Positions 10,098-60,991 of a DNA stretch of 64,000 nucleotides are shown in pieces (position 1 is the first letter of the stretch; every line of letters begins with the position of its first letter). The notes under the pieces were generated by a model. The model was given only the letters and a program-made list of their open reading frames with translations. It had not been told where the DNA came from and made no database searches. The stretch spans positions 1-64,000 of IMG/VR virus record IMGVR_UViG_3300042923_000281; one strand, written 5' to 3'. The position numbers and the translations under genes were made by a program.

Positions 10098-10281
10098 TAT
10101 CGCGACCCTCGATGACGTTGTTGATGTCCGCAGCTGCGATGGCAGCGATGGTACGGTCGTTCAGCGGGACACCATCCAGATAACTGGAGATCTGGTTCCC
10201 CGCGACGTTTGCCACGATCTCTACCGAGAGGTCAATGGCATTCGCGACGAGCGCGAGGTTGTCAAAAGTAGTGGTGCTCAT
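10090..10281 (-). CDS. Small hypothetical protein
   Basis: AGGA RBS before MSTTTF; overlaps the next start. Confidence 0.6.
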   Translation of the reverse strand: MSTTTFDNLALVANAIDLSVEIVANVAGNQISSYLDGVPLNDRTIAAIAAADINNVIEGRDNA

Positions 10282-10353
10282 GAGCAAGTTCCTGTGAAAT
10301 TTCGAGGCGCTGTAAAGGAAGGTCCGGGAACCCTAGAGGCCCCCGGACTTCGA

Positions 10354-46680: not shown

Positions 46681-46889
46681 TCACGCGTGCTCGTGGGTTG
46701 AACTCCGACGATTACCTGTTGACCGCCGGTGGCATGTTCGATCACGTGAACTCCGCTGACCACGATGCCCGTTACGCTCCGAAGAACGCTGCGGGTGTTG
46801 ACTGCTCGGTGCACTGGAACGGCAACGCCGCCTACATCTGGGGTGGTGGTGCGTGGCGCCAAGTCTGGCCGCCTCTGTGGCAAGACTGA
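45444..46889 (+). CDS. Second tail fibre-like protein with NPH repeats
   Basis: Paralogous YPLDLDG N-terminus, four repeats, Trp-rich end WGGGAWRQVWPPLWQD. Confidence 0.8.
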   Translation: MSVPPIIQYPLDLDGTSPTNKIVGERREISTNTARAFVPKAGPFYTSSFVIINADTGKPLVPVDDYVLVQPFSQASLRSGKDVQCAVVLKVQAPITVIMDYQVVGGEYSWNLSALADLIAQLNLDDRPIKWGSIIGRPTAYPPAPHIHDIGDTYGWEYVVWQLERITNAILVGDEASHDELRQQMQFIRDQLQANIDAVDLKIDNHLNDFNNPHQTTKAQVGLSLVENYQVASNAEALAGTVGNRYMTPTLVAILANRISQEITDAHEAKKNNPHAVTKAQVGLGSVDNFATATQAQAEAGAATNVFMTPQRTYQAIMVFAGNKINQHVADMNNPHNTTKAQVGLGLVDNFQTATAAEAQQGILNDRFMTPARTKAAIDAMVGNVINQHISNFNNPHNTTKAQVGLGNIPNNITRARGLNSDDYLLTAGGMFDHVNSADHDARYAPKNAAGVDCSVHWNGNAAYIWGGGAWRQVWPPLWQD

Positions 46890-46917
46890 TGTAAAACTAC
46901 CGCTTGAGGACTGCATC

Positions 46918-47424
46918 ATGTTTCAACGAATGGAAAACCTGTTCACTGAAATCAGTGAAGAACTGCTGGACCTCGATGTCCTGATGATGAGTCCTCATGT
47001 GTACGAGCAGGGCTTGGTGAAGTTTATCAAGAACGGCGGTAGTCACGATGTTTTCACTATTTCTGATTACCTTGAGATCGACGACTGTCCTGTCAAGGTA
47101 GAAGGCATGGAACGCCTCAACAGAACCATGTGGAACGTCTGTAAACGGTTGGCAGATCACTTCGGCCATGATGGCCCGGTGACCTGTCACCTGTTTATCT
47201 CCCCAAGGGACGGGGTAAGTTTCCCTATGCACACTGACTTGGACGATGTGGTTATCTACATGGTCACAGGACAAAAGACTTTCGAGTCACTGGACGGGTC
47301 GATGGACCTTGTAGCCGGTGACGCTATCTACATCCCGAGAGGTACGGAACACCGTGCCATCAACACTGACAGTTCCTTGATGCTGAGTTTCGGCCTGGAA
47401 CTCTTCACGGAAGCTAAACTGTGA
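46918..47424 (+). CDS. JmjC/cupin (RoxA/NO66-like) 2OG-Fe(II) hydroxylase
   Basis: FPMHTD..D, G-K, L.AGDAIYIPRGTEH; GAGGA RBS. Confidence 0.75.
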   Translation: MFQRMENLFTEISEELLDLDVLMMSPHVYEQGLVKFIKNGGSHDVFTISDYLEIDDCPVKVEGMERLNRTMWNVCKRLADHFGHDGPVTCHLFISPRDGVSFPMHTDLDDVVIYMVTGQKTFESLDGSMDLVAGDAIYIPRGTEHRAINTDSSLMLSFGLELFTEAKL

Positions 47425-48458
47425 ATCAAAAGACCATTTACGTCAAGACCACCGGTACTTGCAACCTGAACTGTCAGCACTGTTTCACCAACGGGAAGAA
47501 CGGGGATAAGACCCACTTCAACCCAGAGGCGACAGTGGCCTGGATCAAAGACTTTATGTCTCGGTATCCGGAAGACACTCATTACCACATCGAATTCCAC
47601 GGCGGGGAGCCTTTCCTTGTGCCGCTGGAGAAGATGAAGATCGTAGCCGATGCGTTCATTGAACAAGAGAACGTGTCCATGTGTGCCAACAGCAACTTGA
47701 CCTTCAAGCTGACTGACGCGCACATCGACTTCATCAAGCATTATTTTGGTGGTTACATTGGGACCAGTTGGGATCATTGGATTCGCTGGAGCAACGAGAA
47801 GCAGGTGAACCTGTGGAAGAGTAATCTTCGGTTGCTGAACTCCCACGACATTGACATTGGTCTCAAGGTGTCTGTCAGTCGTCCTCTTATCGAGACCACG
47901 CCTGATTGGTTCCTCGATCAGATGGAGGCCATTGCGGTGGACGATGTGTCACTGGAGCGTTTGACCCATGACGGCAGTGCTGAGGTCAATCCAGACATCT
48001 TCCCCAACAACGAGGCTCAGGATAACTGGTACCTCGCGCTTTATTTGCGTTACAAAGAACGGAACCCACGCGTAAAGATTCGCACCTTGGACATCATCGA
48101 GCAAAAGCTCAAGATGAAGATGGTGAAGGTCGACACCAACTGCCGTAACTGTGAGCAGAACCTTGTGACCATGAACCCAGACGGGTCGTTGTCCGGTTGC
48201 CCTAACGCAGCCACCAAGCTTCACCATGCCAAGTTAGAACAGGGCGTCGATGCGTTCCTTCAATCCGAATCTCGGGTCGAAGAGATCGTGACTGAATTGA
48301 CGTGGGGTGATACGTGCATTACGTGCGACGTGTTCGATCTATGTGGGGGCGATTGTCATCGACTTCCATGGCAGAAAGGCCGTTGTGGTGGTCTCAAGAA
48401 CACCCTTCGTTTTTTGTCGGGTCGAACTCAACAGTCCAACCTGATTATAAAGGTGTGA
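47421..48458 (+). CDS. Radical SAM/SPASM protein 1
   Basis: CNLNCQHC, FHGGEP; C-terminal CRNC..GC..CITCDVFDLCGGDC..C. Confidence 0.9.
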   Translation: MNQKTIYVKTTGTCNLNCQHCFTNGKNGDKTHFNPEATVAWIKDFMSRYPEDTHYHIEFHGGEPFLVPLEKMKIVADAFIEQENVSMCANSNLTFKLTDAHIDFIKHYFGGYIGTSWDHWIRWSNEKQVNLWKSNLRLLNSHDIDIGLKVSVSRPLIETTPDWFLDQMEAIAVDDVSLERLTHDGSAEVNPDIFPNNEAQDNWYLALYLRYKERNPRVKIRTLDIIEQKLKMKMVKVDTNCRNCEQNLVTMNPDGSLSGCPNAATKLHHAKLEQGVDAFLQSESRVEEIVTELTWGDTCITCDVFDLCGGDCHRLPWQKGRCGGLKNTLRFLSGRTQQSNLIIKV

Positions 48459-48459
48459 T

Positions 48460-48996
48460 ATGGCCGAAGTAATTACTCGGAACCGGATGGCCGTCAATGC
48501 CAACTCCATTCTGAAGAACAACATGAACAGTGGGATCAGTTGGGGTACGAATAACTACCCTGCCAACTCCCTGCCGGGCTGGTTTGCTGGAACGACTGCT
48601 GGGGTGGACTTCACTGCCGTGGCGGGTCACTTCCAAGCCGGTAAGCCCAGTGCGTCTCAGACAGTAGCTGTGCTGCGTAACATCGCTAACACCTTTGGTG
48701 GTGTGCGGACTACGCGGATCGTCATCTACTACAACAACAACGGGAACCTGCAAGTCCAGTACGATGGAACTGCGGTGGCCAACACTATATACGGTGTAGG
48801 TGATTTCGCCTCCCAAGCCAACCTTGCTGGCCTTGGAGTGAATACTCCATTGTCCTTGAACATGTTCAACGCTGCCTGTCAGGCGCTCTGGAACGTGTAC
48901 GTGGCCAACTGCCGGAACCAAGTCCTTACTCTGACCAACACCGTTTGCCACACGAGCTGTCACACCAGTTGCCACTCGTCCCGCGGTCGTCGGTAA
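48460..48996 (+). CDS. Asn/Gly-rich protein with C-terminal (CHxS)3-RGRR tail; candidate substrate of the cluster
   Basis: 178 aa, AAGG RBS, ends VCHTSCHTSCHSSRGRR. Confidence 0.8.
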   Translation: MAEVITRNRMAVNANSILKNNMNSGISWGTNNYPANSLPGWFAGTTAGVDFTAVAGHFQAGKPSASQTVAVLRNIANTFGGVRTTRIVIYYNNNGNLQVQYDGTAVANTIYGVGDFASQANLAGLGVNTPLSLNMFNAACQALWNVYVANCRNQVLTLTNTVCHTSCHTSCHSSRGRR

Positions 48997-49013
48997 TCAT
49001 CAAGGAGAACATC

Positions 49014-49823
49014 GTGGATCAGACTACCGAAGTGGAAGTCAAGAAAGAGCCTAACAAGCTACCTGAACCGCGCTTTGCAGCCATCGAAGGCCCGCAGGTT
49101 GTCATCGAGACAACCGTACCTGTACCTATCGCCATCATGCGCCGCAAGTTCAGTGAGAACATCAAGTTCATCGTGGACTACGACAACAGTCGCCACAAGG
49201 GCAAGGTGTTCATCACGTACCTCACCAACTTGAACGTTGAGTGTGAGCTGCGCTTTGGCTCAGTGGAGTCGAAACTGGAGCTGGTGAAAGAGTACCTGCA
49301 CATCACCTCCATGGTCGACCTGCCTCAGCTGGAAGACATCGTGATCAACCTGTTGCTGGCAGCGACGGGCAAGCCGTACCACTTGGACTTCAATCCTCTG
49401 GACTTCATTCTGGAGAACGAAGCGATCCTTCAGGTATGGATGCGTAACTGCTGCATGATCCCGACGTACGCCTTGCACAGTTACCCGCCGACTGAAGAGT
49501 TGGTAAAGAACTACGAAGAGATCCCAGGCGAAGACCTGACCGGTATCAACTTCGTGCACTTGGCCAGCCACCTGATGTTCCCGATGCTGATTTCCGACGT
49601 CCCTGAAGAGCACTGGTGCTGGAACAAGACGTTCTTCAAAGAGTACTGCTTCGGTGGTCACAACCTGTTCTACTACACGCAGTCGGAGAACAACCCGTTC
49701 TTCATGGCGTTGCTGGTGGTCAGTGAGCCGGAAGCAGTGGGTGATCTGGGGATTGCAGCGGCCACTATCCTGCAAGAAAACCACACTTACCTAAAGGGCC
49801 TCGAACATGTACCATCTGCTTAA
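49014..49823 (+). CDS. Hypothetical protein (rSAM cluster)
   Basis: AAGGAG RBS before GTG at 49014; 269 aa. Confidence 0.7.
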   Translation: MDQTTEVEVKKEPNKLPEPRFAAIEGPQVVIETTVPVPIAIMRRKFSENIKFIVDYDNSRHKGKVFITYLTNLNVECELRFGSVESKLELVKEYLHITSMVDLPQLEDIVINLLLAATGKPYHLDFNPLDFILENEAILQVWMRNCCMIPTYALHSYPPTEELVKNYEEIPGEDLTGINFVHLASHLMFPMLISDVPEEHWCWNKTFFKEYCFGGHNLFYYTQSENNPFFMALLVVSEPEAVGDLGIAAATILQENHTYLKGLEHVPSA

Positions 49824-50862
49824 CCAGACGTACGTCGATACTGAAACACGGATCGACCGTACGGCCAATACGATCACCATCTCCCCGCAGGTGGGCTTCG
49901 AGTACATCCCTCAGGCCAATGAGAAGGTCGGCACCCATTTGGGTTACGGCACCAGTCTCGATGCGTTCACGCCTGAGCAGTTCCTCGACCTCATGATTGC
50001 CGCGCGTGATCTGGAAGAGAAGGTCGTCATCTACACTGATGGTAAGACCTACGCTCGCATGTACGCCATGTTGATCAAAGCGGTGTTTCCAAGCATCGAC
50101 TTCGAGAACTTCCGCTGGTTCATGCTCTGCAAGAAGGCCACCTTCAACTCGATCATCGTAGCCATGGGTGAACCCCGTGTTGACGTGCTCTCGAGTGTGG
50201 TCATCAACACAGCGCTGTGCCAAGAGCTGTTCGATAAGGAAGAGGCTCTGCAAGAGGTCTTCAACGAACTGGTGGCAGAAGACGCCGATGCACTGTCGCT
50301 GGAATGGCACATTGCTCGACTGCGTACCGAAGACATTGCGGGAAAGATCCCTAAGGCAACCAAGACCATCCTGCGTCGTATCGCTCTGTCGAACGCCCAT
50401 GATGCCATGGATGTCTGGGCACGTCACTTGACCCGTCCTGAGTTCTGGGACATGGCCGGTGCTGACATGGAAACGTTGCTCAATGCACCGTCCGTGTTTG
50501 AAGGCTGCTTGGGTCTGCCTCACCTGGCCTCTCAGCAGTTGCTGCGTCCTGGCCTGTACGACTTCCGTCCGAACGATACGTGGATCAAAGGCATGCTGCG
50601 TGAAGCAGTGGACCTGATGCACCGTCTGGAAGACGACTCGTCGGCTGACCGTGCGGCTGAGATCCTGCGCTTGCTGGAAGACGACCGGAACATGGTAGAG
50701 GCAGCTAACTGCCTTGATCGTGTCAACCGGATGTTCAACGGCGAGATGCGGATTGCGTTGGCCATGCGTGACACAGGCAAGTACGACGAGAACCTCATTC
50801 GTCACATCCTGAACATGGAGCTGTCGAGCCTCAAGGCAGCTTTGGAAGGAGCGGCCTGGTAA
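49807..50862 (+). CDS. Hypothetical protein (rSAM cluster)
   Basis: 351-aa ORF overlapping both neighbours. Confidence 0.75.
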   Translation: MYHLLNQTYVDTETRIDRTANTITISPQVGFEYIPQANEKVGTHLGYGTSLDAFTPEQFLDLMIAARDLEEKVVIYTDGKTYARMYAMLIKAVFPSIDFENFRWFMLCKKATFNSIIVAMGEPRVDVLSSVVINTALCQELFDKEEALQEVFNELVAEDADALSLEWHIARLRTEDIAGKIPKATKTILRRIALSNAHDAMDVWARHLTRPEFWDMAGADMETLLNAPSVFEGCLGLPHLASQQLLRPGLYDFRPNDTWIKGMLREAVDLMHRLEDDSSADRAAEILRLLEDDRNMVEAANCLDRVNRMFNGEMRIALAMRDTGKYDENLIRHILNMELSSLKAALEGAAW

Positions 50863-51857
50863 TGGAACTGATCCCTGTAGTGAACATACTCAGGGAGAAG
50901 AAGGGTCGCCGTAAGGAGGCCCATCTGATCCTGTTCGAATGGTGCAACCTGCGGTGTTCCTTTTGCCATCAGGACCATGATTCCAAAGTGGGCTTCGATG
51001 CAGTTGACATGATCCGGAAAGCACAGACACTGATTGATTCGGTGGACAGTGAATCCGAGATCGTGATCAACATCACCGGCGGTGAACTGTTCATGGACGA
51101 TGTACCGGACTGGATGTTCGGCTACTACCTGACGATTGGCAAGATGCTGCTCGAGAACTTCCCTCATGCCAAACTGGTCTGGGGGACGAACTTGATCTTC
51201 AAGGACGTCTGGCGGGTAGCGCGGTTGATCCACATGCTGAGACCGTATGGCAAAGTCGTTCTGGCTACATCGTACGATCCGGCTGGCCGTTTCAATGAGA
51301 TGCAACGAGTCCGCTTCTTCGAGGTGCTTGAGGAAGTGGCTCCGTTGGTTGAAACTGTCAACGTGGTGATTACCAAGCAGAACATCGAATCGTTCCTTGC
51401 GGGGCGTGAAGGTCGTGAGGTGGCTTGGCTCTGTGAACAGTTCGACGTGTACTTCGACCACTACATCCCTAGCCAGATGTACGAGTACATTCAGCCGGAT
51501 GAAGAGCTCATCAGTGCGCTCTACCTGCACCTCAACAAGAAGTACCCCAACTCCTACCCGATCAAGGACTGGAAGGCTAACGTGATCAATGAGACCACGT
51601 GCCGCTCCACCAAGATCATCAACAAGGACGGCGTTGTCAGTACTTGTTGGTCTGAGGCGGGCAAGGGTGCGATCTTGGATGAGGCTGAAGGTCTGCGGGC
51701 TAAGGATGAAGCAGAGATTGCGTTCGTGGAACATTACGACTGCTTCTCCTGCGAGTACTACACCCGGTGTGGCTTGCGGTGCTTCCTCCATGACACTGTC
51801 TTGGGTGAGAAGTCCAAGGTGTGCAGCATCAAGACCATGTTCAAAGCAATTCTGTGA
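50862..51857 (+). CDS. Radical SAM protein 2
   Basis: CNLRCSFC, ITGGELF; C-terminal C..C..CFSCEYYTRCGLRC..C. Confidence 0.9.
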   Translation: MELIPVVNILREKKGRRKEAHLILFEWCNLRCSFCHQDHDSKVGFDAVDMIRKAQTLIDSVDSESEIVINITGGELFMDDVPDWMFGYYLTIGKMLLENFPHAKLVWGTNLIFKDVWRVARLIHMLRPYGKVVLATSYDPAGRFNEMQRVRFFEVLEEVAPLVETVNVVITKQNIESFLAGREGREVAWLCEQFDVYFDHYIPSQMYEYIQPDEELISALYLHLNKKYPNSYPIKDWKANVINETTCRSTKIINKDGVVSTCWSEAGKGAILDEAEGLRAKDEAEIAFVEHYDCFSCEYYTRCGLRCFLHDTVLGEKSKVCSIKTMFKAIL

Positions 51858-51994: not shown

Positions 51995-52207
51995 ATGACC
52001 GATTCCATCTTGCCAATACGTCGCCGTACGCCACTCGTGCCTCGTATCTCCCGTAAACTGGGCGATGATGCGTGGCTTCGTGAGAAGCTCAAAGAAGCGC
52101 AGTGTCCAGAAGCAGAGCAACGCCGACGTGACTACCTCGGTCAATGGACCGCCCAGCCTGCTGATAAGGAAACGCCCGATGGACCTGATCGTCAAGCCGA
52201 CCGTTAA
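51995..52207 (+). CDS. 70-aa small protein
   Basis: GGAGG RBS; overlaps the start of rSAM 3. Confidence 0.55.
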   Translation: MTDSILPIRRRTPLVPRISRKLGDDAWLREKLKEAQCPEAEQRRRDYLGQWTAQPADKETPDGPDRQADR

Positions 52208-53267
52208 ATGTAACTTCAAGTGCACGTTCTGCTCGAGCACCCACCTCTCTGAAGATCCGAAAGAGATCGTAGAGCTGGAACAGATCGAGCGGTTCGTGCA
52301 ACGCTTCAATGTGAACACCATCATCGTCAACGGCGGTGATCCTCTGATGATGCCTCCTGAGTACTACTGGAGCCTCATCGAGATCCTAGACCGTAACGAC
52401 AGCGATGCGTCGATCAGCTTCACGTCCAACCTGTGGCCGTTCTACGTCAAGCCAGAGAAGTGGGAAGAACTGTTCAAGCATGAGCGCATGGGTGTCACGA
52501 CCTCCTTTCAGTACGGCGACAAGCGTCTGAAGGGCGATGGCAGTGTCTTTACCCAAGAAGACTTCCAGAAGGTCTCAGACCTCTTCCTGGAGCGCATTGG
52601 GTATCGTCCAGAGTTCATTGCGGTCATTGATCGGGACAACGAGCACACCGTGCTGGATACCGTGCGCCTAGCTAAGGAGATGGGCGTGGTGGCTAAGGTC
52701 AACTACGTCATGGGTTCAGGTCCTGAAGTGGTCCGGGGTGGCATCACCATCGGTGGACAGAACCAGTTCTTCACGCAGGCGGACATGTACGGTCACTACA
52801 TCGAGATCTACGACGCGGGTCTCATGGAGTGGGAAAGCAACACCAAGCAGATGGCCAAGCGACTTCAGCACAAGCACACCACGTGTCCACTGGCCCGTAA
52901 CTGTGATGAAGGTATCCGCACTCTGCAACCGGGTGGTGGGTACTTTTCCTGCGGTGCCTTTGCTGATGACGGCGCGTACCCGATTGACTTCGAGAAGGAG
53001 ATGACGACTGACGTGATAGCGTTGCCTCTGCGTTACGAAGCCGATCTGGATTCCATGAAGGAGTCGTGCTACACCTGCCCTATGTTTTCCATCTGCAATG
53101 GCTGCCGTAAGACCGTGGCTGACACCAAGCGGTTTGGGCTGGTTGAACACCACTGTCGCAAGATGAAAAGCCAAGCTGCCAAGATCATCGAAATCAATGG
53201 CATGTCCGCTCACCTAGAGCCGACGCCGTATGAAGACGAATCACTTCCTTTGATTGCGCGAGGTTAA
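52179..53267 (+). CDS. Radical SAM/SPASM protein 3
   Basis: MDLIVKPTVKCNFKCTFC, NGGDP; CPLARNC..C..CYTCPMFSICNGC..C. Confidence 0.9.
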   Translation: MDLIVKPTVKCNFKCTFCSSTHLSEDPKEIVELEQIERFVQRFNVNTIIVNGGDPLMMPPEYYWSLIEILDRNDSDASISFTSNLWPFYVKPEKWEELFKHERMGVTTSFQYGDKRLKGDGSVFTQEDFQKVSDLFLERIGYRPEFIAVIDRDNEHTVLDTVRLAKEMGVVAKVNYVMGSGPEVVRGGITIGGQNQFFTQADMYGHYIEIYDAGLMEWESNTKQMAKRLQHKHTTCPLARNCDEGIRTLQPGGGYFSCGAFADDGAYPIDFEKEMTTDVIALPLRYEADLDSMKESCYTCPMFSICNGCRKTVADTKRFGLVEHHCRKMKSQAAKIIEINGMSAHLEPTPYEDESLPLIARG

Positions 53268-53268
53268 C

Positions 53269-53484
53269 ATGTCCGTCCCTATCCTGGATCAAATGGCGTT
53301 CTTCCCACCCGGTCATGAACTCAAGCTTCAGATCCCTGAGGTCTTGAAGAAGATCGTGCTCAAGCGCTGTGTCGAAAGCGTTGACGACTTCCTCGACGTC
53401 GTGAGCGATTCCCGGGGTATTAAACTGAGCCCTTACCAGCGAGATTTCTACAAATGCCTAAGTCAAGAATCAACGTCTCGCTGA
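53269..53484 (+). CDS. 71-aa small protein
   Basis: GAGG RBS; fills the gap between rSAM 3 and rSAM 4. Confidence 0.55.
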   Translation: MSVPILDQMAFFPPGHELKLQIPEVLKKIVLKRCVESVDDFLDVVSDSRGIKLSPYQRDFYKCLSQESTSR

Positions 53485-54386
53485 ACCCGTGGTACTACTG
53501 CAACTTTCGGTGTGACTTCTGTTACCTCACTGAGCAGCAGTTAAGCGACAAGCGATTCATTCCGCTGGACGTCTTTGAACAACGCATTGATGAACTGCTG
53601 GAGCACTTTGAGATTGGCCACATCGACATCTACGGTGGGGAAGTCTTCCTGTTGCCTCAGCAGTACTTGATGGACATCAAAGACATTCTGCACATGCGAG
53701 GGATTGATGACATCGTCGTCGTGACCAACCTGTCGCACGTACCGGACATCGTCCACGACCCGGCATTTGACATCTCGGTGTCGTATGACTTCGGGGCGCG
53801 TGAGAAGCACGATCAGGTGTTGCAGAACATCTTCCAGCTCAGCAACAAGTTCAACATCCTGACGTTGGCAGGCCGTACGTTCTTGGATCTGGTGACTCCT
53901 GACGAGTACGTACAGACCATGAACGGGTTCCCACATCTGAAAGGCTGTGAGATCAAACCGTACAGTGCCAACCAAGCCAACGATCAGGACATCTCGTTCA
54001 AGGAGTTTGAGGAGTTCGTCTGGGCAGTCATCACCCACCCAGAGCGTAAGTTCTATTTCGAGAACGAGACTCAGGTCAAGGAAGCCGTAGAAGGCAGTCG
54101 TAATGCTTTCTCTGATGACCACATCTACATCACTCCGACTGGCGATTTCGCTGTACTGGAGTTTGACAAGGATGATCGTGAGTTCTTCCTGACCGTTGAT
54201 GGGGTTGAAGGTTACCTCAACTGGTGCGGACAAGAGTATGAGCGAGTAGCGGACAATCCGTTCTGTGCATCGTGTACGTTCCACGGCGGGTGTCTGTCTG
54301 AGCACTTGCGGGAAGTCACAACCCTTGAGAACTCCTGCAATGGGTTCAAGGGTCTCTTGTTAAAGTGGGTGGAGCATGGATCTTGA
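53454..54386 (+). CDS. Radical SAM protein 4
   Basis: CNFRCDFC, YGGEV; C-terminal CASCTFHGGCLSEH..C. Confidence 0.9.
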   Translation: MPKSRINVSLNPWYYCNFRCDFCYLTEQQLSDKRFIPLDVFEQRIDELLEHFEIGHIDIYGGEVFLLPQQYLMDIKDILHMRGIDDIVVVTNLSHVPDIVHDPAFDISVSYDFGAREKHDQVLQNIFQLSNKFNILTLAGRTFLDLVTPDEYVQTMNGFPHLKGCEIKPYSANQANDQDISFKEFEEFVWAVITHPERKFYFENETQVKEAVEGSRNAFSDDHIYITPTGDFAVLEFDKDDREFFLTVDGVEGYLNWCGQEYERVADNPFCASCTFHGGCLSEHLREVTTLENSCNGFKGLLLKWVEHGS

Positions 54387-55413
54387 ATTTGTAGAGCACC
54401 GGCAGCGGTTGGAAATCACCCTCGACATCTTTCGGGGGTGCCAACACCATTGTTCAGGGTGCATGATCGATAAGCAGTTGGGTGGGGACGTTGATGACAT
54501 TCCTCAACTGGCTGCTATGATCAAGGAAATGATGGAGGCTGGGTACGTGGCCTTTGACATGGGGATCGGTCCTACCGACTACATGTCCTCGGACAACACC
54601 AGCGACGTCATGAGTCATCCTGTCTTCCAAGAGATGGCGCAATGGTTCCATCAAGTGACGTTCAACGCAGCGTTCCTTGAGAAGGACATGGACAAGTACA
54701 AGGTGATGTGTGAGGAGATCGATGCCTCCATCCCCGGTAAGGCTGTCCGCTTCCTGATGCCGGCTGCTCCGCACTTCTTCAAGAGCGACAAGTTCGGCAA
54801 CATGATCACCGAGAAGCTTGAGTTCGTCAAAGAGCACCTGAAGGTCGCTTACTTGAACGAAGCGGGCTTTGTGGTCAACTGCACACACGAGACTGTGGGT
54901 GAGGATTTCGATGACTTGATGAAGAATGGGTTCGCTGTGGATTTCCCAGTGGACAAGGACGACATCTTGAACATCCCGTATGGTCGTCTCAAGGTCAAAG
55001 ACCTGATGACTGCTCAGCGGATCACCCGCATGTCTCACCGGATCACGCAGTTCTACTCAGGCCTCAATGGGACTGATGAGCGTCGTCGTAATCCTGACCT
55101 CTGTTACCACACCGGAACGATGGTCAATCTGCTGTACACCGGCGGTAAGCTGTATTGGGTGCCTTTTCTTAAAGACGACTGTCCGTTCCTTGAGGACGAG
55201 TTCGTCGTTCCTCGCCCCTGGTCTATGGATAACCTTCTGAACACCCGTCAGAAGGCCATGGAGCGCGCTATGGAGTATCTTAAAGACACTCCGTGCATGA
55301 GTTGCGTCTACATGAGTAGTTGTAGCGAAAAGGGGATCATCAATATCATGGAACGGATGCAGATCCGTGAATGCCTCGTGGGGTTGCAGTATGTCGACAA
55401 TGATTCAGAGTAG
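54376..55413 (+). CDS. Divergent radical SAM-like protein 5
   Basis: CQHHCSGC, no GGE motif; C-terminal CMSCVYMSSC..C. Confidence 0.7.
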   Translation: MDLEFVEHRQRLEITLDIFRGCQHHCSGCMIDKQLGGDVDDIPQLAAMIKEMMEAGYVAFDMGIGPTDYMSSDNTSDVMSHPVFQEMAQWFHQVTFNAAFLEKDMDKYKVMCEEIDASIPGKAVRFLMPAAPHFFKSDKFGNMITEKLEFVKEHLKVAYLNEAGFVVNCTHETVGEDFDDLMKNGFAVDFPVDKDDILNIPYGRLKVKDLMTAQRITRMSHRITQFYSGLNGTDERRRNPDLCYHTGTMVNLLYTGGKLYWVPFLKDDCPFLEDEFVVPRPWSMDNLLNTRQKAMERAMEYLKDTPCMSCVYMSSCSEKGIINIMERMQIRECLVGLQYVDNDSE

Positions 55414-56416
55414 AGCGTTCAACCTGACGCTTGAGATTCTACAAGGCTGTAAGTTCCAATGCGTCGGCTGTATGGTGGACAAGGACTTCGATCCCGGTCC
55501 CTTCAATAAAGACCGGCGTGAGCTGCTGGACATGGTCGATGACATGAAGGCTGCGGGCTATCGCCTGCGTGAATTCACCATCGGGCCTGTAGATGTGATC
55601 GCCTCCAAGGCCGGGGTGGACATCCTTGACCACCCGTTGATCTTCCAGTTGGCTCAGCGTTACGATTCGATGGTGTTGCCGCTGGCTCTGTTGACGGACG
55701 ACGGACTGGAGGAGCTGTGTGAGAAGGTCAACTTCCTGATGAAAGGGAAGTCCTTCACGATTGCCACCCCGTTCCCACTCAAGAGCACGTACAACCCCAA
55801 GCACCAAGAGCTGATCAACCGTCGTGTGCAGTACGTCATTGACCACCTGCCTGATGTGAAGTTCGAACTGCTCTACCTGACCGTGAACATGACCGGTGAC
55901 TCCATTGACCAGTTCAGTGTCGAGACCAATCAGGCCATTCATGAGTTGGACTTCGGGGTGAAACGGCTGGTGGAGTACGTGTTCCCTCATGTACGCAAAG
56001 GGTTCGATGACCTGATGAACCGTTCTGCCTTCCTGAGGGCTTTTGGGAAGTTCTGTGACGTGATTCACGCATGTAAGGACACAGAGTTCACCCGGTACCT
56101 GATCAAGCCTCTGGCGGACTCTCTGGAGGCCACGTATCGTTCGGGCAAGTTGTACTACACACCGACCTTGATCGAGAAGTTCCCGATCTTCCATCATGAC
56201 TTTGTCGTGCCGAAGCCATGGTGCAACGCAACCATCGAGCAGTTCGAGGAAGATCAGTACATGGAGCAGTTGGTCAACAACAGCAACAACCAACCGTGCA
56301 GCGATTGCATGCACTTGGACCGTTGTGCTCGCGGTGATGTTCAAGCCATCATGGCACACCTGTGCAGCACTGACTGCCTCGTCGACATGAAAAACCGTTG
56401 GGATGTGCCTGTATGA
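55391..56416 (+). CDS. Divergent radical SAM-like protein 6 (paralog of 5)
   Basis: CKFQCVGC; C-terminal CSDCMHLDRC..C. Confidence 0.7.
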   Translation: MSTMIQSRAFNLTLEILQGCKFQCVGCMVDKDFDPGPFNKDRRELLDMVDDMKAAGYRLREFTIGPVDVIASKAGVDILDHPLIFQLAQRYDSMVLPLALLTDDGLEELCEKVNFLMKGKSFTIATPFPLKSTYNPKHQELINRRVQYVIDHLPDVKFELLYLTVNMTGDSIDQFSVETNQAIHELDFGVKRLVEYVFPHVRKGFDDLMNRSAFLRAFGKFCDVIHACKDTEFTRYLIKPLADSLEATYRSGKLYYTPTLIEKFPIFHHDFVVPKPWCNATIEQFEEDQYMEQLVNNSNNQPCSDCMHLDRCARGDVQAIMAHLCSTDCLVDMKNRWDVPV

Positions 56417-56859
56417 TCAATGATAAATGGTGGGTCGATAAACGTTACAAGGTGGAGATCCCTGAGTGGCTTTTGGAACAGGCGTTCTGTGAAGTCAACA
56501 AGGAGTACATCGAAACTGAAACAGTTGTTGACTGGGCGCTGGAGAACATCCTGCCATTTGCTCAGAAGATGATGAGCACCCAAGACATCACAATCTGTGC
56601 CAACCATTTCCACATGGGAACGGCTGGCCTTACCCCTCATGACCACTTGCCTCATGCGTTCACGTCGATCCTGTATCTGACAGACGCTGAAGGTGAGCTG
56701 GTCATCCATCTACCGGACGGAAAGTTCATGCACGTCACACCAGAAGCAGGGTTGCTGGTTACGTTCCCTGCCCACCTGGTGCATCACGTCGAACAGTCCC
56801 CTTTTGACGAGCTTCGTGTCTCGTTGGCGAGCAACTATGAATTCACAACACCCGTATAA
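56413..56859 (+). CDS. 2OG-Fe(II) oxygenase
   Basis: PHDH, ILYL, FPAHLVHHV, RVS. Confidence 0.8.
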   Translation: MINDKWWVDKRYKVEIPEWLLEQAFCEVNKEYIETETVVDWALENILPFAQKMMSTQDITICANHFHMGTAGLTPHDHLPHAFTSILYLTDAEGELVIHLPDGKFMHVTPEAGLLVTFPAHLVHHVEQSPFDELRVSLASNYEFTTPV

Positions 56860-57271
56860 AGACTATCAGCGCCTCTACAACGAGATGGTGACTGATCACC
56901 CCGACGCATTTGCCAACATGGAGATCGTCGAATCCGAAGAGCTGGTGGACAACGCGTTGCATTACTTCCGTGAAGCGACGTTCCCGTTGTACTACCCGGC
57001 CAAGTCGTACTCGGTCGCGATCATCTACGCGTTCAAGCTGTTTGAACTCTACGGGATCGGGATCTACGACGCCTTGCGTGACGAAGACCTGTTCTTGGGT
57101 CAAGACCCTTTCTTCGTGCCGTACGACGAAGACCCAGACACCTACGACGCTATCCTGATTGGGTTGCAACAGATCCCGAACTGGATCGAGTCGGGCTGGG
57201 CACCGCAGACCGTCAAGTACTTCATGCTCGAGTGCACGGAGGAAGGGGTTCAATCCGTCCTTGGAGGTTAA
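56837..57271 (+). CDS. Acidic hypothetical protein
   Basis: 144 aa from MNSQHPY; overlaps the upstream gene. Confidence 0.7.
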   Translation: MNSQHPYKDYQRLYNEMVTDHPDAFANMEIVESEELVDNALHYFREATFPLYYPAKSYSVAIIYAFKLFELYGIGIYDALRDEDLFLGQDPFFVPYDEDPDTYDAILIGLQQIPNWIESGWAPQTVKYFMLECTEEGVQSVLGG

Positions 57272-57272
57272 C

Positions 57273-57830
57273 GTGGAAATCATCCAGCCCTGGAAAACCG
57301 AAATCGCTCGCATCAACGTCAGGGATCAGTTCGACATGGAGGCCTTTTCCAACGAGGTCTTCATGATGTACTCCATGACGCAAGGGGAAGCCAACTCGCA
57401 GGAGAAGATCAACGCTGAGAACTTCCCTGTCACGATGGACATGCGGGACAACCTCATCACCCCTCTGATTCAGAAGTTTGCCAAGCGCTGCTTCGACACG
57501 ACCTTGGACGACTTCTACGTCGAGACCAATGGCAAGTGGATAGAACCGGGTGAAGGCCTGTTCCCGCACTACCATCCAGGCTCTGTGGTATCCGCGATCT
57601 GCTACCCGTGTGACTCGAACAATGGCATGACCATGTTTGACCCACGGGGCAATGCGTGTCGCGGATACCCAAAACCTATGCGACAAGCCCACTTTGGCAA
57701 TTTCACGATCTCGCCACGGGCAGGGGACATCTTCATCTTCCCCAGCTATATCCAACACAGTGTCCCTCATGTGACGGAGGACATCAGACTGTCCCTGCTA
57801 CATGAGTACTACGTCACTCGAAACTTATAG
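57273..57830 (+). CDS. 2OG-Fe(II) oxygenase (TIGR02466-like)
   Basis: GGAGG RBS before GTG; PHYHP, FDPRG, FPSYIQHSV, RLS. Confidence 0.8.
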   Translation: MEIIQPWKTEIARINVRDQFDMEAFSNEVFMMYSMTQGEANSQEKINAENFPVTMDMRDNLITPLIQKFAKRCFDTTLDDFYVETNGKWIEPGEGLFPHYHPGSVVSAICYPCDSNNGMTMFDPRGNACRGYPKPMRQAHFGNFTISPRAGDIFIFPSYIQHSVPHVTEDIRLSLLHEYYVTRNL

Positions 57831-57841
57831 AAGGCTCGATA

Positions 57842-58393
57842 ATGAACATCATCCAACCTTGGAAGATCGAGATCGCCCAAATCAACCTGCTGGATAAGGT
57901 TGATAACGACGAACTCGCCAACGAGATTCACATGCTTCATTGCTTGTGTCCTCGTAGCAGCCAAACACCTCTGGACGTGACGCCTGAGCAGTTCCCTGCA
58001 TTGGCTCACTTCCGTGATGAGATCCTGCGTCCGATTGCTGAAGAATACATCCGTCGCTGCTTCGGTGTTGATCCGAAAGAGATCACCATCGACACCTTTG
58101 GCAAGTCGTTCGAGAACGGTGAATCCCTGGGGTCTCACCTGCATGGCAACAGCTGCCTGACCAGTGTGTACTACCCGGAAGATTCGAAAGCCGGTATGTC
58201 ACTGGTCGATCCTCGCTTCAATGCCTCGCGTGGTTATCCGCGTGCTGTGCGTGACACTCACTTCGGTGAGCATTACGTAGCGCCGAAGGCTGGTGACCTG
58301 TGGCTGATGCCAAGTTACATCCAACACAGCGTTGAAGCCAACCCGGCTGACATGCGTCTGTCCCTCATCAACGACTTCCACTTCAAGGCGTAA
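57842..58393 (+). CDS. 2OG-Fe(II) oxygenase (TIGR02466-like), tandem paralog
   Basis: HLH, DPR, PSYIQHSV, RLSL. Confidence 0.8.
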   Translation: MNIIQPWKIEIAQINLLDKVDNDELANEIHMLHCLCPRSSQTPLDVTPEQFPALAHFRDEILRPIAEEYIRRCFGVDPKEITIDTFGKSFENGESLGSHLHGNSCLTSVYYPEDSKAGMSLVDPRFNASRGYPRAVRDTHFGEHYVAPKAGDLWLMPSYIQHSVEANPADMRLSLINDFHFKA

Positions 58394-58395
58394 TC

Positions 58396-59049
58396 ATGGC
58401 TGACGAACAACCTCTTTACCTGGGTGCGGATCGTGGACACTTCCGTACCATGCGTTTGATCGACAACGCAGGTGTGGTACTGCGAGCCAACTGCCGGATC
58501 AAAGAAGCCACGGTCTTCAACTACCTGAGCGACCTTCAGTACGCCATCGTGGGTTACTCCATTGAATGGTGGCCTGAACAAGACCCTGCTCCGCACTTGG
58601 GTGGTGAAGCGCATCCGTACATCCCGCGCAATCGCCCGAACGTGACCAAGCTGTACTTCCGCATGAAGACCTCGGCCACCTCGAAGATGCTGCATCTGGA
58701 AGACGCGATCATCAACGACTTCCTGAACAGCAAAGTGCTGGCAGAGCCGATGACGTTGCAGTCCTTCTCTCAAGAAGCGGCTGAGCAGATCACCAGTTCC
58801 AGTAAATGGCGCGTGTTGCAGAAGTCCCAGTGGGATTACTCCAACGCCGTGCACATCACCAAGTACGAAGCGACCTCCAACGCTCCGTTGACGCTGGTGC
58901 AAGAAGGGCTGCGCTTTGACTGGCGTCTGACTGGTCGTGATGATCAGATGGAAGCGGCGCAGATGAGCAACTATCCCTTCGCCAAACTCCGGGACTGCTA
59001 CCCGGCCATGCAAACCTACCTTGAAGGGCTCCACAATGGCAGCAACTAA
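58396..59049 (+). CDS. Hypothetical protein
   Basis: 217 aa, coupled to the endolysin. Confidence 0.7.
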   Translation: MADEQPLYLGADRGHFRTMRLIDNAGVVLRANCRIKEATVFNYLSDLQYAIVGYSIEWWPEQDPAPHLGGEAHPYIPRNRPNVTKLYFRMKTSATSKMLHLEDAIINDFLNSKVLAEPMTLQSFSQEAAEQITSSSKWRVLQKSQWDYSNAVHITKYEATSNAPLTLVQEGLRFDWRLTGRDDQMEAAQMSNYPFAKLRDCYPAMQTYLEGLHNGSN

Positions 59050-59758
59050 AGAACAACTGAAGGAACTCCAGCGTAACCTCAAAGCGCTGGGTTTCTACAC
59101 GGGCATCATCGACGGTCTGTGGGGCGGTGCCTCTCACGGTGCTTTCCTGAACGCTCGCCGGAAGGCCGTGAACATGTCGAAGCCGTCTACGGCTGCCGAC
59201 GGTATCAATGGCTTGCTGTTTGCTTACTGCAAGGCTCCTGCGTGGTCTGTCAAGGTCTCCGATGAGTTCCTGCGCAAGACCAACAAGATCGCGACCGATC
59301 TGGCCCTGCCATGGGACGGTACTGACACCCTGATGGCCTGCATGGCGTTCGAGAGTGGCTTCAGTCCGACTATCCAGAATGGTGCAGGTGCTCCGTTCTA
59401 CGGTCTGATCCAGTTCGGTGCCGCAGCAGCCAAGGACTCGGGTACCACGATCCCTGCGCTGTTGAAGATGTCGGCCGAGCAACAACTCGACTACGTCTAC
59501 AACTTCTTCAAGCCGTACAAGGGCAAGCTGAAGACCCTCAGCGACATCTACATGCGCATCCTCCTACCTACTGCTGTGGGCAAGCCGGAAGACTACGTGC
59601 TGTTCAGCGAAGCGAACACCAAGTCCAAGGCCTACCTTCAGAACAAAGGGCTGGATGCCAACCGTGATGGTCTGATCACCAAAGCGGAAGCCGCTGCCAA
59701 GGTAGCGCAGAAGTACGTCGACGGTCTGCACCCGAACAACCTGCGCATCGCAGCGTAA
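59036..59758 (+). CDS. Modular endolysin (PG-binding + lysozyme-like/lytic transglycosylase domain)
   Basis: LQRNLKALGFYTGIIDGLWG PG_binding_1 pattern; MAFESGF..GLIQF; DANRDGLITKAE. Confidence 0.85.
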   Translation: MAATKEQLKELQRNLKALGFYTGIIDGLWGGASHGAFLNARRKAVNMSKPSTAADGINGLLFAYCKAPAWSVKVSDEFLRKTNKIATDLALPWDGTDTLMACMAFESGFSPTIQNGAGAPFYGLIQFGAAAAKDSGTTIPALLKMSAEQQLDYVYNFFKPYKGKLKTLSDIYMRILLPTAVGKPEDYVLFSEANTKSKAYLQNKGLDANRDGLITKAEAAAKVAQKYVDGLHPNNLRIAA

Positions 59759-59811: not shown

Positions 59812-60552
59812 TTAGCTGATCAACTGGTCCCAACGGGCCTGGATTACTTCCCAGTACACGGAAGGCTCGATCCCGTCGTACGCCCCGATGGAGAAACCGT
59901 CATTGAGTTCAACCAATGCAGTCTGTCCTGTAGAGAGTACACCGAAGTCCACTGCGTAGCCTGCTGGTGCAGCACTTTCAGTCAAGTCCCGGACAGCGTC
60001 TAAGATGATGCCGCGATTGGGTTTGATGTTACGGTCCCCGCCGTGATCCGCAAAGCGAATGTCCAGCAAGCAACCGTTGGCCACGTAGCAACGCCATTCA
60101 CTGACGAACTCTACGACCTCACCGACCCACACTGGCAGCTTATCCGACGCCCCATTGAACCGAGGGTCCATGGAGTCACAAGTAACAAACCCTGTGAAAC
60201 GTTTCAAGGCAACCGGTTTGACGAAATGTGAACCCACGTCTTCGATCAGGTTCTTTGCATCACGCAGCGTGAACATCTTGGCGACGTTACGATGCAGGTG
60301 ATGGTACAAGCACTCTGGATAGCAGTCCTCGTCAGGCAGTACTTTATCAAATTGACGCAGAGCGTGCTTCATGAACGGTACACTGCCAGCCACCAGATCC
60401 GTGGCGTACAATGGGATCTGGTTACGGGACATCTGTTTCTCGTAGCAGATCAGCACCGGGATGTGATGTTCTTCTGCATGACTCATGAGAAGTTGTTCTT
60501 CTAGACCGAGCCGCCCGTTACGACGTTCGATGACTAAGCGTTCTGGCTTCAT
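59812..60552 (-). CDS. ATP-grasp protein, DUF4343/R2K-like
   Basis: FVKP..KRFTG, V.FVSEWRCYV, AVDFG, LVELNDGFSIGAY. Confidence 0.75.
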   Translation of the reverse strand: MKPERLVIERRNGRLGLEEQLLMSHAEEHHIPVLICYEKQMSRNQIPLYATDLVAGSVPFMKHALRQFDKVLPDEDCYPECLYHHLHRNVAKMFTLRDAKNLIEDVGSHFVKPVALKRFTGFVTCDSMDPRFNGASDKLPVWVGEVVEFVSEWRCYVANGCLLDIRFADHGGDRNIKPNRGIILDAVRDLTESAAPAGYAVDFGVLSTGQTALVELNDGFSIGAYDGIEPSVYWEVIQARWDQLIS

Positions 60553-60607
60553 GGTGATTCCTAAATGATGAAAAAGAAAAGAACCCGAAGGCTCTTTTCT
60601 GTAGGTG

Positions 60608-60991
60608 TTAATCGAACGGCCACTGTCCTTTCGACGGAGGGATCTCAATGACCGTGATGTTTTCTTTTGGTTGTTTCTCCACCGCCTCGAAGTACTCCTG
60701 AGCAGCTTTCGCTTGCTCGGGGGTCGGAGGTGGGAAGAAGACCTCATCGATGATCTGACTGATCTCACGAACGTCGCGCTTGTTACCTTCAGCGTCAATG
60801 AAGTAGCCAGTGACGCCTTTAGGACCCGGTGTGCTGTCGTTCAACCCCTCGACCACGTCACGCAGTACCGCTTTGCAGTACTTGAGTTTCATGGTCAGTG
60901 AGGCATTGTTCAACCGCTGACGGACATTCGACAGGTCTGGTTTGATTTTCATCTTGGCTTGCATGTCCAAGACTTCTTGACTCAGGCTCAT
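60608..60991 (-). CDS. Hypothetical protein
   Basis: 127 aa, AAGGAG RBS. Confidence 0.7.
   Translation of the reverse strand: MSLSQEVLDMQAKMKIKPDLSNVRQRLNNASLTMKLKYCKAVLRDVVEGLNDSTPGPKGVTGYFIDAEGNKRDVREISQIIDEVFFPPPTPEQAKAAQEYFEAVEKQPKENITVIEIPPSKGQWPFD

What the first reader, a model, noticed from the sequence alone, without database searches (positions are those of the whole stretch)
54376..56416. Tandem pair of atypical radical-SAM paralogs (CxxxCxGC, no GGE motif)
Seen: the two proteins share TL(D/E)I..GC...C.GCM(I/V)DK, IGP(T/V)D in place of GGEP, GKLY..P, FVVP(R/K)PW and a C-terminal CxxCx5C...C. Both have Gly instead of the usual aromatic residue before the third Cys. Established: that aromatic residue and the GGE motif contact SAM. 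Inference: a new subfamily with altered chemistry, or Fe-S scaffold/electron-transfer partners, possibly a heterodimer.
Basis: partly seen in the sequence, partly recalled or inferred. Interest (0 to 1): 0.6.

Follow-up and report, generated by a model that had tools for sequence, protein, structure and literature searches.

The report
Divergent phage radical-SAM maturase pair
Two neighbouring jumbo-phage genes encode an uncharacterised, virus-centred branch of the radical-SAM/SPASM protein-modifying enzymes, and they sit in a widespread phage operon built around a small protein with an almost invariant Cys-His-x-Ser x3 C-terminal tail.

Summary
ORF1 (54376-55413) and ORF2 (most likely 55391-56416) are paralogs (25% identity, E 4e-36). 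Both carry CxxxCxGC, GP(T/V)D where GGE normally sits, and a C-terminal CxxCx5C...C.

They belong to a distinct family: 195 clusters at 50% identity among 1.84 billion proteins, and no Pfam or NCBIfam model passes its cut-off. The family signature is GCxxxCxGC, GPTD, N74, N168, R204 and four invariant C-terminal Cys. The fold is a radical-SAM barrel plus a SPASM-like domain (anSMEcpe Z 15.4). That domain keeps only the Aux-II ligand set. The adjacent canonical rSAM "D" shares this layout and is the nearest relative.

Gly before the third Cys does not prove altered chemistry, because E. coli NrdG has CVHECPGC. Copy number runs from 1 to 7 per phage, apparently through repeated tandem duplication. 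The complex prediction for a heterodimer gave no verdict.

The pair lies in an operon of four canonical rSAM-SPASM enzymes, a cupin and 2OG oxygenases. The operon also encodes a 178-aa protein ending CHTSCHTSCHSSRGRR, a tail found in at least 120 viral loci and 32 cellular genome loci.

Best reading: accessory rSAM maturases acting on that tail. SAM cleavage and the substrate remain untested.

The parts
54376..55413 (+). ORF1, atypical radical-SAM / half-SPASM protein (345 aa): CQHHCSGC at 22-29, GPTD at 65-68, C307xxC310x5C316x16C333.
   Evidence: AF2 model pLDDT 93. Best solved match anSMEcpe, Z 15.4. GGTGGAG ribosome-binding site 4 nt before the ATG; the start overlaps the stop of gene D by 11 nt.
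55391..56416 (+). ORF2, paralog of ORF1 (341 aa from ATG 55391; the longest frame starts at GTG 55367): CKFQCVGC, GPVD, CxxCx5C...C.
   Evidence: PF04055 scores 20.9 bits, below the 29.5 cut-off.
53454..54386 (+). Canonical rSAM 'D' (CNFRCDFC, YGGEV) with the same four-Cys C-terminal layout (CxxCx5Cx14C). It is the nearest relative of the atypical family.
   Evidence: hhalign of the family against D: probability 88%, E 3.6e-7 over 280 columns. The family HMM hits D orthologues at E 4.5e-5 and 7.9e-4.
48460..48996 (+). 178-aa protein ending VCHTSCHTSCHSSRGRR*; proposed substrate of the operon's rSAM enzymes.
   Evidence: The tail is invariant across 32 divergent homologues. AF2 gives a folded N-domain (pLDDT 87) and a low-confidence tail. 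No PDB fold match.
47421..48458 (+). Canonical rSAM-SPASM 'A' (CNLNCQHC, HGGEP, full 7-Cys SPASM).
   Evidence: TIGR04085 SPASM domain 27.6 bits; phrog_1802 E 2.5e-52.
50862..51857 (+). Canonical rSAM-SPASM 'B' (CNLRCSFC, TGGEL, CxxCx5Cx3C).
52065..53267 (+). Canonical rSAM-SPASM 'C' (CNFKCTFC, NGGDP, CxxCx5Cx3C). The true start is probably downstream, because the DT01 orthologue is 363 aa.
   Evidence: PF04055 50.4 bits.
48945..49823 (+). Conserved hypothetical 'X' (phrog_20767), co-inherited with the tail protein.
49807..50862 (+). Conserved hypothetical 'Y', co-inherited with the tail protein.
46765..47424 (+). Cupin / JmjC-like protein at the head of the operon (start uncertain).
56413..56859 (+). 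2OG-Fe(II) oxygenase (PF13759). Its ATG overlaps the ORF2 stop codon (ATGA).
57159..57830 (+). 2OG-Fe(II) oxygenase (PF13759).
57842..58393 (+). 2OG-Fe(II) oxygenase (PF13759).

Best explanation
ORF1 and ORF2 are diverged radical-SAM enzymes of the SPASM (peptide/protein maturase) lineage. Each has an N-terminal partial TIM barrel whose invariant CxxxCxxC should hold the SAM-binding [4Fe-4S] cluster. Each also has a C-terminal SPASM-derived domain that has lost the Aux-I cysteines and keeps only the four Aux-II-type cysteines, so two clusters per protein are expected. They arose from the neighbouring canonical 'D'-type enzyme by in-operon duplication and then duplicated again. They serve as accessory tailoring enzymes of a conserved phage operon (cupin, rSAM A, tail protein, X, Y, rSAM B, C, D, atypical copies, 2OG oxygenases). 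The operon's shared target is most likely the exposed, invariant (CHxS)3-RGRR C-terminal tail of the 178-aa protein at 48460-48996. The proposed mechanism is reductive SAM cleavage, then H-atom abstraction from a tail residue, with each paralog handling a different position or step. Shown here: paralogy, fold class, cysteine layout, family signature, operon conservation, and the association with tail proteins. Inferred: cluster content, SAM cleavage, the identity of the substrate, and the division of labour.
For: Paralogy. Invariant Cys triad and four C-terminal Cys across 153 family members, with GPTD, N168 and R204 conserved at the C-terminal ends of predicted strands beta2, beta5 and beta6, where rSAM enzymes bind SAM. 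AF2 pLDDT 93, with best solved matches all rSAM-SPASM/twitch maturases: anSMEcpe Z 15.4 over 295 residues, then ChlB, SuiB, SkfB, CteB, EpeE. CxxCx5C plus a distal C equals the anSME Aux-II ligand set C317/C320/C326/C348 (PMC5715301). Gene D shares that layout and is the nearest relative. NrdG shows that Gly at this position is compatible with SAM cleavage. Start and stop codons overlap along the operon. The same operon occurs in DT01, RSL2 and metagenomic phages. The tail is invariant while the rest of the protein diverges. 106 of 120 tail loci hold an rSAM-like ORF and 34 hold 1-6 atypical copies. The atypical family goes with short tail proteins, 26/33 against 8/83. dN/dS is 0.09 and 0.15.
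Against: No biochemical data exist. At least 11 loci have A-D plus the tail but no atypical copy within 1.5-8 kb downstream of D, so the family is not needed for basic tail maturation. In anSME geometry an Aux-II-only cluster would lie about 27 A from the radical-SAM cluster, which is awkward for an intramolecular redox role. The association counts are not phylogenetically independent. The substrate could be another protein or a small molecule.
Confidence: 0.55

Rival explanations
1. The pair are non-catalytic (pseudo-enzyme) Fe-S proteins. They would keep their clusters but no longer cleave SAM, and would serve the canonical enzymes A-D as electron conduits, cluster donors or substrate-holding chaperones.
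For: GGE is replaced by GPTD and the aromatic residue is lost. Wherever the contigs are long enough, the family sits beside canonical rSAM genes. It is optional. Only the distal, Aux-II-type cluster site is kept, about 27 A from the radical-SAM site in anSME. Intermolecular electron transfer between rSAM maturases has been proposed (Eastman et al. 2023, seen only as a reference-list entry in PMC13012085; the paper itself was not read).
Against: The CxxxCxxC triad is 99% conserved. Polar residues are conserved at the ends of beta2, beta5 and beta6, which points to a ligand pocket under selection. NrdG shows that CxxxCxGC enzymes cleave SAM. Expansion to 6-7 diverged copies per phage fits site-specific catalysts better than a generic redox partner.
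Confidence: 0.2
2. ORF1 and ORF2 form an obligate heterodimer, the descendant of a homodimer that was fixed after duplication.
For: Tandem copies seem to have arisen independently in several lineages: window/DT01 pair, L003 pair, L004 pair, L005 triple. Overlapping genes suggest equal dosage.
Against: RSL2-type phages manage with one copy. Copy number varies from 1 to 7, which does not fit a fixed 1:1 complex. To my knowledge the structural relatives matched act as monomers. There is no positive evidence for an interface.
Confidence: 0.15
3. The pair act on something other than the tail protein, for example a nucleotide, DNA base, lipid or another phage or host protein. The link to the tail protein would then be only operon hitch-hiking.
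For: The family is dispensable in many tail-containing operons. Cupin and 2OG oxygenases are generic tailoring enzymes. The operon lies next to tail-fibre-like and peptidoglycan-degrading genes.
Against: All strong structural matches are peptide- or protein-modifying rSAM enzymes. Copy number tracks the type and number of tail-protein genes. The own genome holds no other copies.
Confidence: 0.1

Closest known systems
Anaerobic sulfatase-maturating enzyme anSMEcpe (AtsB family, rSAM-SPASM)
   Same: Best structural match (Z 15.4, rmsd 4.2 A, 295 residues aligned along the whole chain). Shares the CxxxCxxC radical-SAM core followed by a Cys-rich C-terminal domain with CxxCx5C and a distal Cys. 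It acts on a short Cys/Ser-containing protein motif.
   Different: 7-8% identity. No NCBIfam or Pfam score near the cut-offs. The Aux-I cysteines and the fourth Cys of CX2CX5CX3C are missing. GGE is replaced by GPTD, and Tyr before the third Cys is replaced by Gly.
EpeE/YydG epimerase (rSAM with one auxiliary cluster in a 'T-SPASM' extended twitch domain)
   Same: Top Foldseek hit (E 1.7e-5). It is a precedent for a SPASM-lineage maturase with a single auxiliary [4Fe-4S] cluster (PMC13012085).
   Different: Z is only about 11. Which cluster site is retained could not be compared. Sequence motifs and substrate differ.
Neighbouring phage rSAM 'D' (window 53454-54386; phrog_1802)
   Same: Same operon and similar length. 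Same four-Cys C-terminal layout without Aux-I cysteines. It is the only family the atypical profile reaches.
   Different: D keeps the canonical CNFRCDFC and YGGEV motifs and passes PF04055 (35 bits against a 29.5 cut-off). Overall similarity to the pair is about 12% identity in hhalign.
E. coli NrdG (class III ribonucleotide reductase activase)
   Same: GCxxxCxGC motif with Gly before the third Cys, and a non-GGE variant (GGD).
   Different: Small (154 aa) glycyl-radical activase with no SPASM-like domain. This is a motif precedent only, not a relative.
HXS antiphage system (HxsA His-Xaa-Ser repeat effector matured by rSAM HxsB/HxsC; PMC13128918)
   Same: Several rSAM enzymes mature a protein through a short, basic, His-x-Ser repeat region. 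The modification lies in the last repeat (SHRSS). The phage tail reads (C-H-x-S)x3-R-G-R-R.
   Different: HXS is a bacterial defence system, not a phage operon. Its repeat has period 3 and no Cys. HxsB and HxsC models score only E 7e-7 to 1e-4 on the canonical neighbours and give no hit on the pair.

Membership tests
Radical SAM superfamily (PF04055) | CxxxCxxC cysteine triad after strand beta1 | tested here: met
   C22/C26/C29 are invariant in 57 orthologues and 99% conserved in 153 family members.
Radical SAM superfamily (PF04055) | Partial (beta/alpha)6 TIM-barrel fold | tested here: met
   The AF2 model (pLDDT 93) has six alternating strand and helix elements, and its best matches are rSAM structures at Z 10-15.
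Radical SAM superfamily (PF04055) | Score above Pfam's gathering cut-off (29.5 bits) | tested here: not met
   ORF1 has no hit at E<=0.1. ORF2 scores 20.9 bits.
Radical SAM superfamily (PF04055) | GGE motif at the end of beta2 and an aromatic residue before the third Cys | tested here: not met
   The pair has GP(T/V)D and Gly. Neither feature is strictly required, since NrdG has CxxxCPGC and GGD.
Radical SAM superfamily (PF04055) | Reductive cleavage of SAM on a [4Fe-4S] cluster | not testable with these tools
   This needs anaerobic reconstitution and a 5'-deoxyadenosine assay.
SPASM domain (TIGR04085; CX9-15GX4C...CX2CX5CX3C...C) | Seven-cysteine motif binding two auxiliary clusters | tested here: not met
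   Only CX2CX5C plus a distal C is present, and the hairpin GKLY..P carries no conserved Cys. There is no TIGR04085 hit, whereas neighbour A scores 27.6 bits.
Twitch domain (Aux-I only) | Retains the first half of SPASM and lacks CX2CX5CX3C | tested here: not met
   The opposite half is retained: CX2CX5C is present and the Aux-I cysteines are absent.
Anaerobic sulfatase maturase (TIGR03942) | Score above the curated cut-off of 349 bits | tested here: not met
   No hit for ORF1 or ORF2. Neighbours A and C reach only 38-41 bits.
HxsB/HxsC maturases (TIGR03978/TIGR03977) | Score above the curated cut-offs; HxsA/HxsD partners present | tested here: not met
   No hit for the pair, and only weak generic hits for the neighbours. 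The putative substrate has a different repeat.

The most novel reading that the evidence does not exclude
The atypical family would be a catalytically distinct rSAM clade (no GGE, no aromatic residue, a lone distal auxiliary cluster) that installs a new kind of modification on an invariant (Cys-His-x-Ser)3-Arg-Gly-Arg-Arg tail. The operon as a whole would make a peptide-derived metal-binding or redox-active group, comparable in logic to PQQ or mycofactocin, which phages and predatory Bdellovibrionota use when attacking bacterial cells. It could be a mirror image of the bacterial HXS defence.
Probability: 0.2. Interest if true: 0.85.

Novelty: new variant of a known kind. Interest (0 to 1): 0.6.

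Why it matters
Radical-SAM/SPASM enzymes are a main source of new post-translational chemistry. This family has no curated model and lives almost entirely in viruses. It breaks two textbook motifs in a conserved way, and it keeps the 'wrong' half of the SPASM domain. It also points to a widespread, undescribed phage system: several rSAM enzymes plus oxygenases gathered around an invariant 16-residue tail, in at least 120 viral loci and in Bdellovibrionota chromosomes. Finding what is made and what it does could reveal new enzyme chemistry and a new element of phage-host interaction. A cultured relative, Pseudomonas phage pPa_SNUABM_DT01, carries the same operon, so the question can be tested directly.

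Tried and rejected
1. Complex prediction for ORF1+ORF2 gave ipSAE 0.00 in two runs and 'no answer' as the verdict. It is not evidence for or against binding.

2. A profile search of PDB sequences found only a marginal MiaB cluster-motif hit (E 0.029) and spurious PI3K p85 hits.

3. hhalign of the family against single neighbour sequences A, C and D was uninformative (probabilities 0.6-14%). Only a four-sequence D profile gave a usable global alignment. Even there the GGE region is not aligned reliably, so residue-by-residue equivalence of GPTD and GGE is not claimed.

4. I first read the 'atypical-rich' loci (L082, L035 and others) as systems without canonical rSAM enzymes. Whole-contig searches showed canonical PF04055 genes next door, so that claim was dropped.

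5. The search for related loci with alignment A2 failed because no stretch was conserved enough. It was replaced by a degenerate DNA pattern for the tail.

6. A careful IQ-TREE run did not return. The tree used is FastTree, midpoint-rooted, and its support values were not inspected, so the statements about 'independent duplications' are provisional.

7. The RP12/RP31 virion proteomics paper concerns a different rSAM cluster and did not help.

8. Foldseek of the tail-protein model against the PDB found nothing.

9. Literature searches found only gene lists for these phages and no functional study.

Full report
**What is there.** The window is the first 64 kb of a complete 276,978-bp phage genome with direct terminal repeats. 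Its nearest cultured relative is Pseudomonas phage pPa_SNUABM_DT01, with 82% amino-acid identity for ORF1. The two ORFs named in the finding are real and lie on the + strand. ORF1 is 54376-55413 (345 aa). ORF2 is 55367-56416 in its longest frame, but it most likely starts at the ATG at 55391 (341 aa), because orthologues are 337-351 aa and begin MS.MI.. BLASTP gives 25% identity over 330 residues, E 4e-36. Both genes are under purifying selection relative to DT01 (dN/dS about 0.09 and 0.15, with dS saturated). The genome holds exactly these two copies.

**A distinct family.**
- Pfam gives no hit for ORF1 and a sub-threshold PF04055 hit for ORF2 (20.9 bits against a 29.5 cut-off).
- NCBIfam gives nothing. 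PHROGs gives only partial hits to phrog_31457, 'unknown function'.
- Word-based searches found 99 orthologue clusters for ORF1 and 37 for ORF2, all in metagenomes and many on contigs of 200-290 kb.
- A profile of both clades searched against 1.84 billion representatives found only 195 clusters at E<=1e-3, of which 175 are at E<=1e-10. Nearly all are 330-390 aa.
- In 153 members the conserved positions (ORF1 numbering) are G21, C22, C26, G28 (88%), C29, G65-P66-T67-D68 (D 99%), N74, N168, R204, G257, Y260, P263, and C307, C310, C316, C333 (100%).
- The residue before the third Cys is Gly in 124 of 134 representatives and otherwise Asp, Asn or Ala. The exceptions lie in the ORF2 clade.
- The ESM Atlas places ORF1 among viral 'hypothetical protein' clusters, followed by viral rSAM clusters of about 310 aa.

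**Fold.**
- The AlphaFold2 model of ORF1 is confident (pLDDT 93, pTM 0.90). It has alternating beta/alpha elements, then a beta-hairpin and a helical Cys-rich end.
- Foldseek and VIA-align both rank rSAM-SPASM/twitch maturases first. anSMEcpe scores Z 15.4 (rmsd 4.2 A, 295 residues over the whole chain), followed by ChlB, SuiB, SkfB, CteB, TigE and EpeE. Viperin and MoaA come lower.
- The Cys triad follows strand beta1. GPTD sits at the C-terminal end of beta2, where GGE normally lies. N168 ends beta5 and R204 follows beta6. These are the places where rSAM enzymes bind SAM. That mapping is an inference from secondary structure, because model coordinates could not be inspected.

**The C-terminal domain.**
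- The SPASM motif is CX9-15GX4C...CX2CX5CX3C...C.
- In anSMEcpe, Aux II is ligated by C317, C320, C326 and C348: the first three Cys of CX2CX5CX3C plus the last Cys. Twitch domains lack that motif and keep Aux I (PMC5715301).
- The pair has exactly CX2CX5C plus a distal Cys, and no conserved Cys in the hairpin. By sequence it therefore keeps the Aux-II set only, the reverse of a twitch domain.
- In anSME that cluster lies about 27 A from the radical-SAM cluster. This keeps an electron-relay role in play.
- EpeE is a precedent for a single auxiliary cluster in a modified SPASM domain.

**Origin.**
- The gene immediately upstream, D (53454-54386), is a canonical rSAM (CNFRCDFC, YGGEV; PF04055 35 bits) with the same four-Cys C-terminal layout.
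- D is the only other family the atypical profile reaches. hmmsearch gives E 4.5e-5 and 7.9e-4 on D orthologues. hhalign gives probability 88%, E 3.6e-7 over 280 columns.
- The other three rSAM genes of the operon (A 47421, B 50862, C 52065) have full SPASM cysteine sets and GGE/GGD.
- The atypical family therefore looks like a diverged offshoot of a D-like gene.

**Do the motif changes mean altered chemistry?** Not necessarily. E. coli NrdG, a proven SAM-cleaving activase, reads SGCVHECPGCYN and SGGDP. Variation of GGE among bona fide rSAM enzymes is also established knowledge (recalled, not tested here). The invariance of the triad and of polar residues at the barrel's C-terminal face argues for a ligand pocket under selection.

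**Copy number.**
- The family occurs once in Ralstonia phage RSL2 (ORF071).
- It occurs twice in the window, DT01, L003 and L004, three times in L005, and up to 6-7 times in some viral contigs.
- In a FastTree phylogeny the ORF1 and ORF2 clades are sisters. The tandem copies of L003, L004 and L005 group with each other rather than with ORF1 or ORF2, which suggests repeated independent duplication. This is provisional, because support values were not inspected.
- A complex prediction for ORF1+ORF2 gave no verdict.

**Context.**
- The pair sits in a tightly packed, probably translationally coupled operon (overlapping start and stop codons). The order is: cupin/JmjC, rSAM A, a 178-aa protein, hypotheticals X and Y, rSAM B, C, D, ORF1, ORF2, three PF13759 2OG-Fe(II) oxygenases, then a peptidoglycan-binding transglycosylase.
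- The same order is found in DT01, RSL2 and distant metagenomic phages.
- The 178-aa protein ends VCHTSCHTSCHSSRGRR*. This tail is conserved in every homologue, while the rest of the protein falls to about 20-30% identity.
These hold 140 tail ORFs of about 127, 140, 180-200 or 257 aa.
- 106 of the 120 loci hold at least one rSAM-like ORF, and 34 hold 1-6 atypical copies.
- Short (<=145 aa), often duplicated, tail proteins go with the atypical family (26/33), while long ones mostly do not (8/83). Fisher's p is 7e-13, but the loci are not phylogenetically independent.
- At least 11 loci have A-D and the tail but no atypical copy within 1.5-8 kb downstream of D, so the family is an optional add-on.
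- The tail protein's N-terminal domain folds confidently (pLDDT 87) but matches no solved fold. The tail itself has low confidence, as expected for an exposed substrate segment.

**Interpretation.**
- The best-supported reading is that ORF1 and ORF2 are accessory rSAM maturases acting on the (CHxS)3-RGRR tail, with each paralog taking a different site or step.
- The main rival is a non-catalytic Fe-S partner of A-D.
- A heterodimer, or a different substrate, is less likely but not excluded.
- The nearest characterised analogue of the whole system is the bacterial HXS defence. There, two rSAM enzymes mature a His-x-Ser repeat effector and modify its last repeat (PMC13128918). Membership is not supported.

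**Literature.** The published papers on DT01, FLC6 and phage S13 only list these genes. Other searches found no functional study.

**Verdict.** This is a new variant of a known kind, embedded in a widespread uncharacterised phage system.

Noticed in passing
window 48460-48996; loci L007-L126: A protein family defined by an almost invariant C-terminal tail, CH[x]S-CHxx-CHxx-R[GS]RR followed by the stop codon. It is nearly always beside rSAM genes. No description of it was found in the searchable literature.
   Followed up: partly
L127-L158 (genome contigs), e.g. L140 2955-3644 and L139, L155: The same tail motif, with rSAM neighbours that include atypical-family members, occurs in 32 loci of cellular genomes. 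About 20 of these are Bdellovibrionota (predatory bacteria), some on contigs of 1.3-2.8 Mb. In L140 the cluster lies next to lspA (signal peptidase II), which suggests a chromosomal rather than a prophage setting.
   Followed up: partly
L002 (Ralstonia phage RSL2, AP014693) 9971-11035: RSL2 ORF071, the single atypical-family member, is annotated as starting at locus position 10076. The open frame and the homology begin upstream (MTLKDAS... at about 9971). The annotated start cuts off the GCQFNCKGC cluster motif, so the gene is probably mis-started.
   Followed up: partly
window 59812-60798 (-) and 59021-59758 (+): An R2K-clade ATP-grasp protein (PF18299, E 2e-29) lies convergent to the operon. 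A peptidoglycan-binding SLT-like transglycosylase lies at the operon's end.
   Followed up: no
window 56398-56416: The first 2OG oxygenase most likely starts at the ATG at 56413, which overlaps the ORF2 stop codon (ATGA), and not at the TTG at 56398 given by the longest-ORF rule.
   Followed up: yes
L003 13250-14854: A related metagenomic phage operon additionally carries a B12-binding radical-SAM gene (PF02310 + PF04055, 534 aa) among the 2OG oxygenases. This gene is absent from the window.
   Followed up: no
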